Source: Octopus bimaculoides (Eukaryota). Taken from it: a DNA stretch of 38,422 nucleotides. A model generated the notes under the pieces. That model ran no database searches. It was not told the origin of the DNA and was given only the letters and a program-made list of their open reading frames with translations. Positions 15,415 to 21,677 of the stretch are shown here, piece by piece. Made by a program: the position numbers and the translations under genes. Position 1 is the first letter of the stretch. Each line of letters starts with the position of its first letter. The DNA lies in NCBI RefSeq assembly GCF_001194135.2, contig NC_068996.1:4837046-4875467 (forward strand). Direction: 5' to 3'.

Positions 15415-15637
<223 letters not shown>

Positions 15638-15732
15638 ACCTCGGAAGACGCAAGATGCTTCACTCTGTTATGAAGGAGAGCAAAATATTTTCTTGTTAGT
15701 TCATGCATAATACCGAGGTTGAATTGCATGAC

Positions 15733-15876
15733 TATGTGCATCTCTGATCACGAGCAGAAGTAATGGAGTTGCATCACGGCCAAATGTTGAGAAGAATTCT
15801 TTGGGATTTGATTAATCCAGCTCTGGAAACACTGGTGCTTCGTCCAATATCCTTAAACAACCCTTATTCAAGGACC
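15733..15876. mobile_element. Unclassified dispersed repeat, short decayed copy
   Basis: TATGTGCATCTCTGATCACGAGCAGAAGTA...TCCTTAAACAA is shared with 21548-21677. Confidence 0.75.
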
Positions 15877-15976
15877 TAGCTATCTATCTATCTATATATA
15901 TATATATATAATATTAGGGACAAAATAATATAATATTAGGGACAAAATCCAAAATTCCCTAAAACTATATATATAT

Positions 15977-16655
15977 AAGGTCAATATAGCTCTGAGCTCC
16001 TGGATCTTAAGAACCTTCCGGTCCAGAGAACAAGGTGTCATCATTCCACTTTTCTCCTCCTTTGTACGGCCACACCTTGAATACTGCTGCCCCTTGTGGT
16101 CTCCCCACCCAAAACAAAACATCTCGAGGATTGAATCACCCCAGAGGGCACTAACCAAACGAATTTAAGGCATGACTGATCTTGATTACTGGGACCGCGT
16201 TAAAGCCTTGAAGCTCTACTCTCTCCAGCGAGGCCGCGAGCGGTACAGCATTCGTACGATGTGGAAAATATACCCCCAGCATTGCCCAAACGACCTGAAC
16301 ATTAGATTCAAGGTTCATCCAAAGCTGGGACCATGAGCCATACGTCCCCTGCCCAATTCAGGATCCCAACATATAGGTACACTGCGACATAATTTCTTTT
16401 CCTCAACAGGCCCTGCCCTGTTTAACATTGTCCCGAAACAGATAAAAGAGGAAAAGGATCCTATCAGCTTTAAACGGAGTCTAGACAGATTTCTTCAAAG
16501 AATGCCAAACAAGCCACCCATGCATGGATACAACTCACTACTTGAATGGACCATAAACAAAACTTGACTGTAAAAAGGATTTTGATAGTCCTATCAGGTG
16601 GTACTATTAAGTTAGACATGGCCTGGACCAATCTTTGGTTGAAACAAATCTAAGT
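15977..16655 (+). mobile_element. CR1/L2-group LINE, 5'-truncated 3' end (RT C-terminal region plus 3' UTR)
   Basis: SSWILRTFRSREQGVIIPLFSSFVRPHLEYCCPLWSPH...IESPQRALTKRI*GMTDLDYWDRVKALKLYSLQRGRERY...GPALFNIVP...FKRSLDRFL. The VRPHLEY..W.P, IE..QR..TK and L.SL..RR motifs are classic for CR1. There are two internal stops and a terminal TGA at 16565-16567. Confidence 0.9.
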
Positions 16656-16756
16656 TATATATATATATATATATACATATATCTGAATAGAGTCTAAAGT
16701 TTGCGTATTATTTTTTAATCATACATACGCCCGTGTAGTAGGATGAGCGTTTTAGC

Positions 16757-17020
16757 ACATCTTGTGACAAAATCTACGACGTAATTACTAATGACAAAAT
16801 CGTAGGGTGGGGCATGGAATGAAAAACATCATCCGTAAGTTATGATGTGTAAACGGAGCAGACATTTAATGTGAAAGAAACCGTTTTAGAAATTATTAAT
16901 GGAAACAACGATTATCTAGAAATAGACAAAAAGCGAAAATATGGCATTTAGTCATTTATATAGACACACCTCACTGAGACACACTCACAAACACTCATAG
17001 TTATTTATATATACTCACAT
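16757..17020 (+). repeat. Left arm of 264-bp inverted repeat
   Basis: Runs ACATCTTGTGACAAAATC...TATATATACTCACAT and is the reverse complement of 18410-18673 with about 8 substitutions and no indels by my hand alignment. Confidence 0.95.
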
Positions 17021-18166
17021 ATATAAATACGTAAATATATACACATACACACACACAAACACATACAAACGTATAATAATGCAATTGAAAGTAATGCAAT
17101 TTTAATTTGCATACTATACACATATACATATATACACACGCACGCATACATACATAAATACATACATATGTACATCTGCATGGTTTGGAGGACGTGGATA
17201 GATCCACTGGAGAGGATAATACTTTATGCAGGCGTGAGATAACGTTCTATAAGTCACGGAGCATTTAGTAAAGTTCACGACAAAAAAAAGGCCAACACTT
17301 CTGCTTAACACAGATTTATTGACCTGCAGTTATCAATTACATCTCCATTGTCGCTATCCTTTTTCAGAATCCCCGCCATTTCTCGGCTCAAATAACATGG
17401 AATTTTTCCATACTGTTGTCAGCTCCGAATAACGTCTGTCAAGAGAGAAGAGAACAAGTCTGGTATGCCGCAATATAATTCGTAATGAACATCTTGCAGT
17501 TTTGATGTTACCACTCGCACATCCGAATGTTTTTAGTCTCTGGAGTTCTTCCTCCATGACACAAGCAGAGCGTCGATATAGGCATTAAATCTTAATCTCT
17601 TTATTCATTCTGCTCCCCGATTAGTTCGTCAAAACACTACGAAAAGACAAGCATCTTAAGTTATCTTTATTGACTTTCCAAAAAATACCATATTTTTGTT
17701 CGATCTTCACAATTCACCGCGAAATTTCTTCAGTATACGTCGACTCTGTCATTCGTATCCTGAGACGTATCCTGAGACGTATACATTTCATGAACAGTAC
17801 TTCCACTTCATATGACTGAGAACGCCCAAAAGAGGCAGAAACTTTACCATGAACAAGAAATACGAGTGACACCGAGTGAAAAACCCAGTTTCCCTGCGAG
17901 CTATAACATCTGATATTACTAAACAAATGGCTCTGGTTTCAGGCATTCACCACGCTACGAACATTCAAACAATTAATCTGTTGAAATTATCGTGTGAAAA
18001 ATAGACGAGTGGAACTAGTTTTTATCTTTTTCATTCTTCTTCTCGAATGCAGGATTGAACCGAGCACAGTGAAGAAATCTTCTGGAAAGAATTACCTAAT
18101 CGTTGAAGGCGTTGTTGTTTTGGTTTTTTGTTTTTGTTGAGGACATTTAAACAGCACCGTATTTAC

Positions 18167-18217
<51 letters not shown>

Positions 18218-18224
18218 CATCATT

Positions 18225-18273
<49 letters not shown>

Positions 18274-18409
18274 TGCTTTGTTTATAATTTTTTAAACTTC
18301 CAACAACTTCATATTTTTTTTTAATAACTGTGAAGTAGAGAAACTGCAAGCAGAAAGCGACCACTCTGTGGAATGGAACATGGACCTCTTTTGGGCACCT
18401 TCATTTCTC

Positions 18410-18673
18410 ATGTGAGTATATATAAATAGCTATGAGTGTTTGTGAGTGTGTCTCAATGAGGTGTGTCTATATAAATGACTAAATGCCATATTTTCGCTTT
18501 TTGTCTATTTCTAGATAATCGTTGTTTCCATTAATAATTTCTAAAACGTTTTCTTTCAGATTAAATGCCTGCTCCGTTTACACATCATAACTTACGGATG
18601 ATGTTTTTCATTCCATGCCCCACCCTACGGTTTTGTCATTAGTAATTACGTCGCAGGTTTTGTCACAAGATGT
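18410..18673 (-). repeat. Right arm of 264-bp inverted repeat
   Basis: Runs ATGTGAGTATATATAAATAG...TTTTGTCACAAGATGT; partner of 16757-17020. Confidence 0.95.
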
Positions 18674-20001
18674 CTCCATATCAGTTTCCTCTTCGCTGTT
18701 TGTGATTAAGGGAAAGACACGACGAATGGTATCTATGACTGTATCAGAACCATATTAGAAACTTTTACTGGTTAGCACCCCTTAACAATAGCGTAGTTTT
18801 TAACCTTGCCATCCTTGTAGGGGGGCCAATAGTGTTAATGCTGTTGCAGAGTTTGTATGCTAAGATGTGGTTTACACTTCAGCGACATGCAGTGTTGTTT
18901 CTGCAGTCGTTCTTTCTCTTCTTTCTGTTTCATTCTGTTTCATTTCCAGGATAGAAATCCCTAAGGTGGTTTTTGCTGTCATACACGTAGAACACAAGCT
19001 TTCTACGAAGTACAACCAGTCTGATGTATTTAGAATCTAAACATACCTGAGATAGCAATGTGGACCTCGGCGTCACAAGGAATTAGAGTTCTATCCCAAC
19101 CACAACCAATACGCTTTTCTCACTGCCTAAACCGTTTGGAGAAAGTCACAATAAACCATAATCGCTTCCTCTGCAAGTTGAGCGAGACTTTCACCTTTAT
19201 TTCTTTTACTTCATATACAGAGACGCAAATTCATTTCTTTCGTGTATATTTTACAGCTGCCGACTGTATTTGAGCATTCTGCTTATCATCGATGTTCAAC
19301 ACACAGCCTATAGTGTCAAAGCTTTAATCTGTCCGAGATCCTAACCACAAATCACAGACCTCCAAACCTGACAGTAGAACCTTTTGAAATTCCTTTATCA
19401 GGGCTTATCAAATCTCTGGCTGTATGTGTTTTAATTTTTATTTTTAGGAATAAGAAGAGGTATGCCATTTTACTCTTTTGCTTCTTGCCCCTTGTAACCA
19501 TTCGCGAACCAGGTGTTGTCCTCTGTTCACGTACCTCTATGTCTTTTTGTTTTTTTTTCTATTCTAGGATCTTTCACTAATCCAGTTGGACTCCATCTCT
19601 GATGATGATTGTAAAGAATATCGTTGTTGGTGCTGTAGTTATTGTTGTTGTTGTTGTTGTTGTTTCGCATTTGCCGTCACTGTTGTTGAGTGTTGAGCCA
19701 CAGACGCCGATGTTTTTGTTCATATTTTGATGTTACACTTCACGTTTTTGAAAAACAAAAAAAGGGGGGGGGGGAAACAGTTTAACCTTTTTCTTTTCGA
19801 AATTCTTTTATTCTTCTTGATTTTTAATTTCAAACTAAAATTCTCTTCTGAGGAGGTGGGTTGGTAAGTAGGAAAGAATGGAGGGAGGGTGAGGTTTTGT
19901 TTGCATTTTCTTATGTAAACAAAGCTGCCGCCACCAGTAATATAGAGTACCATTGTAATCACTTTGTGAAATACATACACACATGCACACACGCGCGCGC
20001 G

Positions 20002-20098
<97 letters not shown>

Positions 20099-20314
20099 GC
20101 ATATATAAGGAGAGAGAGAGAGAGATAGAAAGAAAGCGAGAAAGAGGGACTCATATATATATGTTTGTATATATGTATGCATGTATGTTGATATAGATAT
20201 AGATTGATAGATAAATATATACATATATATGCATGTTTATATGCATTCACACACAAACACACGCACACTCACACACATACAACACACACACACACGCACA
20301 TATATAAATGTATG

Positions 20315-20388
<74 letters not shown>

Positions 20389-21359: not shown

Positions 21360-21677
21360 GCCCGGATGGAGTACCAGGCAGTGGCTTTCATGGCTTCTGA
21401 TCTTAACTGACTGGAAGTGTAATCATGTACATTGTTTTGTCTTGGTATAAAAAGATGGGCTACAGCAAATGTTCTGCTCAATACCACAGATTTGCTTGTC
21501 AGTTGTTTGACCTTAACCAGTTGAGCATGTCCCTTGGTGGCTGACAATATGTGCATCTCTGATCACGAGCAGAAGTAGTGGGGGAGCATCATAGCCATGT
21601 GTTGAGAGGAATTCTTTGGGGTTTGAATAATTCACCTTTGGAAACATGGGTGTTTTGCTCAACATCCTTAAACAAAC
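21358..21677. mobile_element. Unclassified dispersed repeat embedded in (AAT)n, running into an N-gap
   Basis: Its right part matches 15733-15876. It is preceded by (AAT)n at 21317-21357, and (AAT)n resumes after the gap at about 21972-22083. Confidence 0.75.

What the first reader, a model, noticed from the sequence alone, without database searches (positions are those of the whole stretch)
16757..18673. 264-bp, ~97% identical inverted repeats around a 1.39-kb spacer with no TSD or transposase
This is the clearest large-scale structure in the window. The arms are far longer than mariner or hAT TIRs, are not SINE-derived, and carry internal substructure: a twice-repeated TGACAAAA near the end and a small hairpin ACATCAT-N9-ATGATGT. 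Three explanations are open: an unclassified foldback/MULE-like element; an inversion with staggered-break duplication; or, if intronic, a long dsRNA stem that could be an ADAR substrate, relevant because coleoid cephalopods are known for extensive A-to-I editing.
Basis: partly seen in the sequence, partly recalled or inferred. Interest (0 to 1): 0.72.

Follow-up and report, generated by a model that had tools for sequence, protein, structure and literature searches.

The report
Isolated 264-bp inverted repeat pair
Two nearly identical 264-base stretches face each other across 1.4 kb of non-coding DNA in a repeat-rich animal genome scaffold; this is most likely a one-off local inverted duplication with no evident function, which is an ordinary kind of feature.

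Summary
The inverted repeat is real and lies exactly where stated: 16757-17020 and 18410-18673, 264 nt, 8 mismatches (97.0%), 1389-nt spacer. It sits in one gap-free stretch of a gap-ridden, microsatellite-rich eukaryotic scaffold.

It has no target-site duplication, either around the pair or around each arm. It has no coding remnant, no Rfam or tRNA-like match, and no third copy in the window. No searchable collection holds a relative, but none holds the source genome, so genome-wide copy number is untested.

The claimed substructure is weak. The 7-bp hairpin is expected by chance (P~0.28). The 10-bp direct repeat is borderline (P~0.04).

My own idea, that the arms are 3' ends of the LINE just upstream, failed: that LINE ends 57-100 bp before the arm.

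- **Best reading (~0.45):** a one-off local inverted duplication, from a micro-inversion with staggered breaks or a replication template switch, now neutral.
- **Rivals:** a non-autonomous long-TIR transposon that lost its duplication (~0.25); two copies of a young interspersed repeat (~0.15); an assembly artefact (~0.08).

If co-transcribed, the arms would form a ~264-bp duplex, a textbook ADAR/Dicer substrate. Such repeats are reported to be unusually common in octopus. Low interest.

The parts
16757..17020 (+). Left arm of the inverted repeat (264 nt)
   Evidence: 97.0% reverse-complementary to 18410-18673, gapless
18410..18673 (-). Right arm of the inverted repeat (264 nt)
17021..18409 (.). 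1389-nt non-coding spacer. It contains TA/CA-rich low complexity (17021-17175), about 985 nt of unique sequence (17176-18160), (TTA)n(TTG)n (18163-18272) and 137 nt of unique sequence (18273-18409).
   Evidence: TRF. Six-frame translation has no Pfam hit and no hit among 5.8 billion proteins. It is unique in the window.
16765..16801 (+). Two copies of TGACAAAATC (16765-16774, 16792-16801), 27 bp apart, 9-45 nt from the outer end of the left arm
   Evidence: chance P about 0.04
18629..18665 (-). Mirror copies in the right arm, both reading TGACAAAACC (18629-18638, 18656-18665). Two of the 8 arm differences fall on the same motif position.
16826..16848 (+). Small hairpin ACATCAT-N9-ATGATGT, mirrored in the right arm
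   Evidence: read; not more than chance (P about 0.28)

Best explanation
This is a one-off local inverted duplication, not a mobile element. A 264-bp piece of unique, non-coding DNA was copied in reverse orientation about 1.4 kb away.

Two routes could do this. One is a small (about 1.65 kb) inversion whose breaks were staggered at one end, so that the staggered stretch was filled in on both sides. The other is a replication template switch onto the opposite strand (FoSTeS/MMBIR type).

The two copies have since drifted apart by 3% (about 1.5% each). The breakpoints lie next to TA/CA-rich low-complexity DNA, which is prone to breaks and fork stalling.

The structure most likely has no function. 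Its consequences are physical. It can extrude a hairpin or cruciform. It can flip its spacer by recombination between the arms. If both arms lie in one transcript, it forms a ~264-bp RNA duplex.

**Shown:** the anatomy of the repeat; the absence of a TSD, of coding sequence and of other copies in the window; and the folding potential. **Inferred:** the duplication mechanism, the neutrality and the age.
For: - There are exactly two copies in 38.4 kb, 1.4 kb apart, at 97% identity. The true interspersed repeats of the same window are 73-90% identical and occur 4 or more times.
- Both boundaries are sharp, with no TSD around the pair and none around either arm.
- The arms are not built of subrepeats.
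- There is no tRNA-like head or Rfam family.
- Neither arms nor spacer contain a protein remnant.
- The spacer and both flanks are unique sequence.
- The inner ends of the arms abut or lie near microsatellite tracts.
- Inverted duplications flanking inversions are the documented product of staggered breaks (Ranz et al. 2007, PMC1885836, found).
- The 3% divergence argues against a chimeric-read artefact, which would give identical arms.
Against: - Genome-wide copy number, the decisive test, could not be run. The source genome is in none of the collections.
- The subterminal 10-bp direct repeat near each outer end (P about 0.04) looks like a transposase-binding arrangement.
- Porath et al. 2017 (PMC5625713) state that most such dsRNA-capable structures in animals come from neighbouring inverted copies of repeats, so the prior favours transposable elements.
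- No ancestral, single-copy arrangement was seen.
Confidence: 0.45

Rival explanations
1. It is a non-autonomous cut-and-paste DNA transposon of 1917 bp with 264-bp terminal inverted repeats (long-TIR, foldback, MULE or P-Galileo-like). Its target-site duplication has been lost or exchanged, for example by recombination between two copies or by aberrant transposition.
For: - The inverted-repeat ends are sharp and symmetrical.
- A 10-bp motif is repeated twice within 45 nt of each end (P about 0.04).
- The interior is non-coding and the overall size is typical of a non-autonomous element.
- High identity between arms is expected within a single element.
Against: - There is no TSD of 2-10 bp in any register (and direct reading of the flanks). 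At 3% divergence it should still be visible.
- The termini (ACATCTTG...) do not match the hallmark ends of hAT, Tc1/mariner, PIF, piggyBac, CACTA, P or Transib, as far as I know them from memory.
- The arms are not made of tandem subrepeats, as true foldback arms are.
- There is no other full or partial copy in the window and no transposase trace.
Confidence: 0.25
2. It is two independent insertions, tail to tail, of the same young short interspersed repeat of about 264 bp.
For: - The same window holds a SINE-like family whose members form inverted pairs.
- The literature says this is the usual origin of such structures (PMC5625713).
- Both arms have identical start and end points, as complete elements would.
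- The left arm is followed by a microsatellite-like tract, like a retroposon tail.
Against: - Neither arm has a TSD of 7 bp or more.
- There is no pol III-type head, tRNA or Rfam match.
- The right arm has no tail.
- There are no other copies or fragments in 36 kb.
- Two random members of a family landing 1.4 kb apart at 97% identity requires a very abundant and very young family.
- Specifically tested and rejected: the arms are not the 3' end of the adjacent LINE.
Confidence: 0.15
3. It is an assembly artefact. A divergent allele or paralogue of one arm was joined in the wrong orientation in a short-read scaffold.
For: The window is a draft scaffold with ten N gaps. The longest identical run between the arms is 92 bp, which is hard for short-read assemblers to resolve.
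Against: There is no N gap within 15415-20388. The arms differ at 8 sites, so this is not a simple chimeric or palindromic read. Both junctions read through unique sequence.
Confidence: 0.08

Closest known systems
Inverted duplications flanking inversions made by staggered breaks (Drosophila; Ranz et al. 2007, PMC1885836)
   Same: Two inverted copies of unique sequence bracket a segment. There is no TSD and no mobile-element features, and the copy number is two.
   Different: Those inversions are kilobases to megabases long and were proved by comparison with outgroups. Here the putative inversion is only about 1.65 kb, only one breakpoint shows a duplication, and no outgroup was available.
Long-TIR / foldback DNA transposons (Drosophila FB, Galileo of the P superfamily, PMC3573991; MULEs)
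   Same: They have inverted terminal repeats of hundreds of bp, a short non-coding interior in non-autonomous copies, and repeated motifs near the ends.
   Different: Those elements have 7-10-bp TSDs, arms built of tandem subrepeats (FB, Galileo), and many copies. None of these was found here.
Neighbouring inverted repeats that form long dsRNA and are hyper-edited by ADAR (Porath et al. 2017, PMC5625713)
   Same: The pair is a near-perfect inverted repeat within 2 kb that can form a long duplex. That paper reports such loci to be exceptionally frequent in Octopus bimaculoides (4.4e-3 of random 50-bp loci).
   Different: Most of those pairs come from interspersed repeats. Here the arms look single-copy, and transcription and editing are untested.
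DIRS1-like tyrosine-recombinase retroelements
   Same: They have inverted terminal repeats of a few hundred bp and no TSD.
   Different: They carry RT and YR genes and an internal complementary region matching the repeat ends. Neither is present.
Drosophila hairpin-RNA (hpRNA) endo-siRNA loci (from my own knowledge)
   Same: They are long inverted duplications with a loop, created by local inverted duplication.
   Different: hpRNA arms derive from target genes. Here the arms show no coding or gene similarity, and no small-RNA data were available.

Membership tests
Cut-and-paste DNA transposon with TIRs (foldback/MULE/P-like) | Terminal inverted repeats with sharp ends | tested here: met
Cut-and-paste DNA transposon with TIRs (foldback/MULE/P-like) | Target-site duplication flanking the element | tested here: not met
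   and direct reading: the flanks are ...TTTTAGC | CTCCATA..., with no match at lengths 2-10 and no shared 6-mer within 80 bp
Cut-and-paste DNA transposon with TIRs (foldback/MULE/P-like) | Multiple genomic copies sharing the same ends | not testable with these tools
   The window holds only the two arms. The source genome is absent from all collections.
Cut-and-paste DNA transposon with TIRs (foldback/MULE/P-like) | Transposase, or similarity to an autonomous partner | tested here: not met
   There are no Pfam or protein-database hits for the spacer or the arms. Non-autonomous elements may lack this.
Foldback elements specifically | Arms composed of tandem subrepeats | tested here: not met
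   TRF finds no array inside the arms. There is only one 10-mer, present twice.
Local inverted duplication / micro-inversion with staggered breaks | Exactly two inverted copies of otherwise unique sequence, close together, without a TSD | tested here: met
   (tested within the window only)
Local inverted duplication / micro-inversion with staggered breaks | Ancestral or outgroup arrangement with one copy, and the spacer inverted (inversion) or in the same orientation (template switch) | not testable with these tools
   No related genome is reachable.
SINE / short retroposon pair | Pol III-type head (tRNA-, 5S- or 7SL-like) | tested here: not met
   ARAGORN finds none. Rfam finds none at gathering score, and only microsatellite noise at E<=1.
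SINE / short retroposon pair | Each copy has its own TSD and 3' tail | tested here: not met
   There is no direct repeat of 7 bp or more around either arm. Only the left arm is followed by a simple-repeat tract.
3' ends of the adjacent LINE (one full, one 5'-truncated) | The arm sequence is contiguous with, and homologous to, the LINE 3' UTR | tested here: not met
   The LINE ORF2 C-terminus lies at about 15990-16567. By DNA homology to L002, the element ends in a short-unit/TA tail at about 16655-16700, before the arm.
DIRS1-like retroelement | Internal complementary region matching the repeat ends, plus RT/YR genes | tested here: not met
   There is no arm-like sequence in the spacer and there are no domains.
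ADAR / Dicer dsRNA substrate | Long, near-perfect intramolecular duplex | tested here: met
   The MFE of 16757-18673 is -711 kcal/mol. 259 of 264 arm positions pair with their mirror partner, and the arm duplex is about -436 kcal/mol.
ADAR / Dicer dsRNA substrate | Both arms in one transcript, with A-to-G RNA-DNA differences or small RNAs | not testable with these tools
   No RNA data or gene annotation are available, and the organism is not identified.

The most novel reading that the evidence does not exclude
The structure is one member of an undescribed family of mobile elements that carry long inverted ends and integrate without a target-site duplication. Alternatively, it is a transcribed hairpin locus that the host uses as an ADAR or small-RNA substrate. 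The two TGACAAAAYC motifs at each end would then be protein-binding sites. The fact that both motifs read ...ATC in one arm and ...ACC in the other would reflect selection or conversion rather than chance.
Probability: 0.06. Interest if true: 0.5.

Novelty: new member of a known kind. Interest (0 to 1): 0.17.

Why it matters
As it stands, this matters little. Isolated inverted duplications and inverted repeat pairs are routine in repeat-rich animal genomes. They are reported to be especially common in octopus, where they supply the bulk of ADAR hyper-editing substrates (PMC5625713).

The locus would gain some value in three cases:
- as a clean example of a micro-inversion with a staggered-break footprint, if an outgroup confirms it;
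- as a hotspot for spacer flipping or fragility;
- as a defined, near-perfect 264-bp dsRNA, if it proves to be transcribed.

Tried and rejected
1. **Arms as 3' UTR of the LINE just upstream, with the right arm a 5'-truncated copy.** This was attractive because it would explain the sharp ends without a TSD. It was rejected. The RT C-terminal region ends at 16567. Homology to a related element (L002) shows that the LINE stops in a short-repeat/TA tail at about 16655-16700, which is 57-100 bp before the arm.
2. **Six-frame 'chimeric protein' of the arms, and then of the spacer, against 5.8 billion predicted proteins.** The aim was to catch ORFs called on other copies. Nothing was found.
3. **Exact 26-mer and 20-mer of the arm in JGI metagenome contigs and IMG/VR.** The result was 0 real hits and 2 chance hits that extend to only 20-24 bp.
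4. **Exact look-up of ten window ORFs, to identify the source assembly.** None is in the collection, so the organism remains unidentified and 'cephalopod' is unverified.
5. **Search for a TSD at any offset, for the pair and for each arm separately.** None was found.
6. **LTR, DIRS, Penelope/hammerhead and Tc1 IR/DR readings.** There are no TG...CA ends, no internal complementary region, no ribozyme, and no inner or outer direct-repeat layout.
7. **An extension of the repeat to 266 nt, with 2-bp junction microhomology.** I briefly believed this, but it was an indexing slip and is withdrawn (note 4).
8. **A-to-G bias between the arms as a trace of retroposed edited RNA.** The differences are mixed across strands (3 T/C, 2 A/G, 1 C/T, 2 transversions). 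This is not significant.

Full report
**Observation.** The inverted repeat is exactly as described. The repeat finder and blastn give arms 16757-17020 and 18410-18673. They are 264 nt, gapless, with 8 mismatches (96.97%) and 1389 nt between them, at E about 1e-126. The differences are 6 transitions and 2 transversions, scattered along the arm. The window is a draft eukaryotic scaffold with ten runs of N and very dense microsatellites. The whole stretch 15415-20388, which contains the repeat, has no N. Sensitive searches (blastn word size 7, nhmmer) find no third copy of the arm in the window and no second copy of the spacer or of either flank.

**The claimed substructure.**
- TGACAAAATC does occur twice, 27 bp apart, near the outer end of the left arm. 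A perfect direct repeat of 10 nt or more within 60 nt arises in about 4% of Markov-shuffled arms.
- The ACATCAT-N9-ATGATGT hairpin is no better than chance: about 28% of shuffles have a 7-bp stem.
- One oddity stands out. In the right arm both motif copies read TGACAAAACC, so two of the eight differences fall on the same motif position with the same change. With so few sites I treat this as probable coincidence.

**What is absent.**
- No direct repeat flanks the pair. The flanks are ...GCGTTTTAGC | CTCCATATCAG..., they do not match at lengths 2-10, and they share no 6-mer within 80 bp.
- No direct repeat of 7 bp or more flanks either arm taken as a separate insertion.
- The spacer has no real ORF. 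The longest are translations of (TTA)n/(TTG)n and CA/TA tracts. There are no Pfam domains in six frames.
- Rfam finds nothing at gathering score in the whole window. At E<=1 it finds only sub-threshold matches inside microsatellite. ARAGORN finds no tRNA-like sequence.
- TRF finds no tandem array inside the arms, so they are not foldback-type arms.

**Surroundings.**
- Just upstream, at about 15990-16567 on the + strand, lies the C-terminal part of a non-LTR retrotransposon ORF2 with two in-frame stops. It has 91 database relatives at E<=1e-5. The best are 65-69% identical, and several carry PF00078 or the name 'reverse transcriptase'.
- This suggested that the arms might be two copies of that LINE's 3' end, one of them 5'-truncated, which would explain sharp ends without a TSD. 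I fetched the contigs of the two best relatives.
- DNA homology to L002 runs through the stop codon to window position 16655. There L002 ends in (TATCAAAG)3 TATATA and the window in ATCTAAGT(TA)n. The LINE therefore ends 57-100 bp before the arm, and the idea is rejected.
- Further right, at 32.4-36.0 kb, a family with a tRNA-like B-box motif has four or more copies. Some form inverted pairs of up to 370 nt, at 73-90% identity. That is what repeat-derived inverted pairs look like in this window. The pair under study differs: it is 97% identical and two-copy.

**Search for relatives elsewhere.**
- An exact 26-mer and an exact 20-mer from the arm gave nothing in IMG/VR. In JGI metagenomes they gave only two chance matches, extending to 20-24 bp.
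- Six-frame chimeric translations of the arm and of the spacer found nothing among 5.8 billion predicted proteins.
- Ten exact window ORFs are not in that collection.
Genome-wide copy number, which is the decisive test, remains undone, and the organism is unidentified.

**Interpretation.** Two explanations naturally account for two near-identical inverted copies 1.4 kb apart: a single element with terminal repeats, or a local inverted duplication.
- A cut-and-paste insertion should still show its TSD at 3% divergence, and it does not. The termini resemble no superfamily I know, and nothing else marks mobility except the borderline 10-bp repeat.
- Two independent insertions of a young repeat would each need a TSD and, to land 1.4 kb apart, a very abundant family. 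No head, tail (on the right arm), TSD or further fragment is seen.
- A local inverted duplication predicts exactly what is observed. It could be a small inversion with staggered breaks at one end, as documented for Drosophila inversions (Ranz et al. 2007, PMC1885836), or a replication template switch. The arms' inner ends lie next to break-prone simple repeats.
- I rate the local duplication at about 0.45, a long-TIR non-autonomous transposon at about 0.25, two copies of a repeat at about 0.15, and an assembly artefact at about 0.08. The 3% divergence and the N-free context argue against an artefact.

**How it would work.**
- As DNA, the arms can extrude a hairpin or cruciform, and they can invert the spacer by recombination. 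Their longest identical run is only 92 bp.
- As RNA, if both arms are in one transcript, the minimum-energy fold of 16757-18673 (-711 kcal/mol) pairs 259 of 264 arm positions with their mirror partner. The arm duplex is about -436 kcal/mol. This is an ideal ADAR or Dicer substrate.
- Whether the locus is transcribed cannot be told here.
- Porath et al. 2017 (PMC5625713) report that 4.4e-3 of random 50-bp loci in Octopus bimaculoides lie in such long near-perfect structures. If the window is from an octopus, one such pair in 38 kb is about what is expected.

**Verdict.** This is a real, well-delimited inverted repeat of an ordinary kind. It is most likely a neutral local inverted duplication, the transposon reading is weakened but not excluded, and the dsRNA reading is possible but untested and unremarkable. 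Interest is low.

Noticed in passing
window 15990-16700 (+): This is a 5'-truncated non-LTR retrotransposon. It has the ORF2 C-terminal region ('VRPHLEYC...FKRSLDRFL') with two in-frame stops and a stop codon at 16565-16567, followed by a short 3' UTR ending in ATCTAAGT(TA)n. The best database relatives are only 65-69% identical.
   Followed up: yes
window 32398-35995: An interspersed repeat family with a tRNA-like B-box motif (GGGACTGAACCCGGAACC) and a (TG)n tract has four or more copies in both orientations, at 73-90% identity. They include an inverted pair, 32398-32756 / 32921-33285. A stretch at 32642-32727 and 33493-33578 is 100% identical.
   Followed up: partly
window 16773 and 16800 versus 18657 and 18630: Both TGACAAAAYC motif copies read T in the left arm and C in the right arm. 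Two of the eight arm differences therefore fall on the same motif position with the same change. This is probably coincidence, but it is unexplained.
   Followed up: partly
window 15733-15860 and 21548-21675: This is a 128-nt direct repeat at 84% identity. Each copy lies near an (AAT)n tract or an N gap, which suggests another interspersed repeat.
   Followed up: no
window 1672-2553 (-) and 1-330 (+): ORFs of 134-135 aa contain 'LQIYFMGD', which is reminiscent of the Helitron N-terminal region. An ORF ending '...AKECIWWTRLKG' is reminiscent of a LINE ORF2 tail. Both resemblances are from memory only, and Pfam found nothing.
   Followed up: partly
L002 640-1037: In the JGI metagenome contig fetched for comparison, the related LINE is followed directly by sequence that translates to a GIY-YIG-like motif ('...YCIRCLACDALYVGQTGRRLADRF'), as in Penelope-like elements. 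This resemblance is from memory and was not tested.
   Followed up: no
window 15906-15948: This is a perfect 22-bp tandem duplication, ATATAATATTAGGGACAAAATA x2. It contains GACAAAAT, the core of the arm motif. GACAAAAY occurs 12 times in the window against 3.75 expected, but duplicated copies largely drive that excess.
   Followed up: partly
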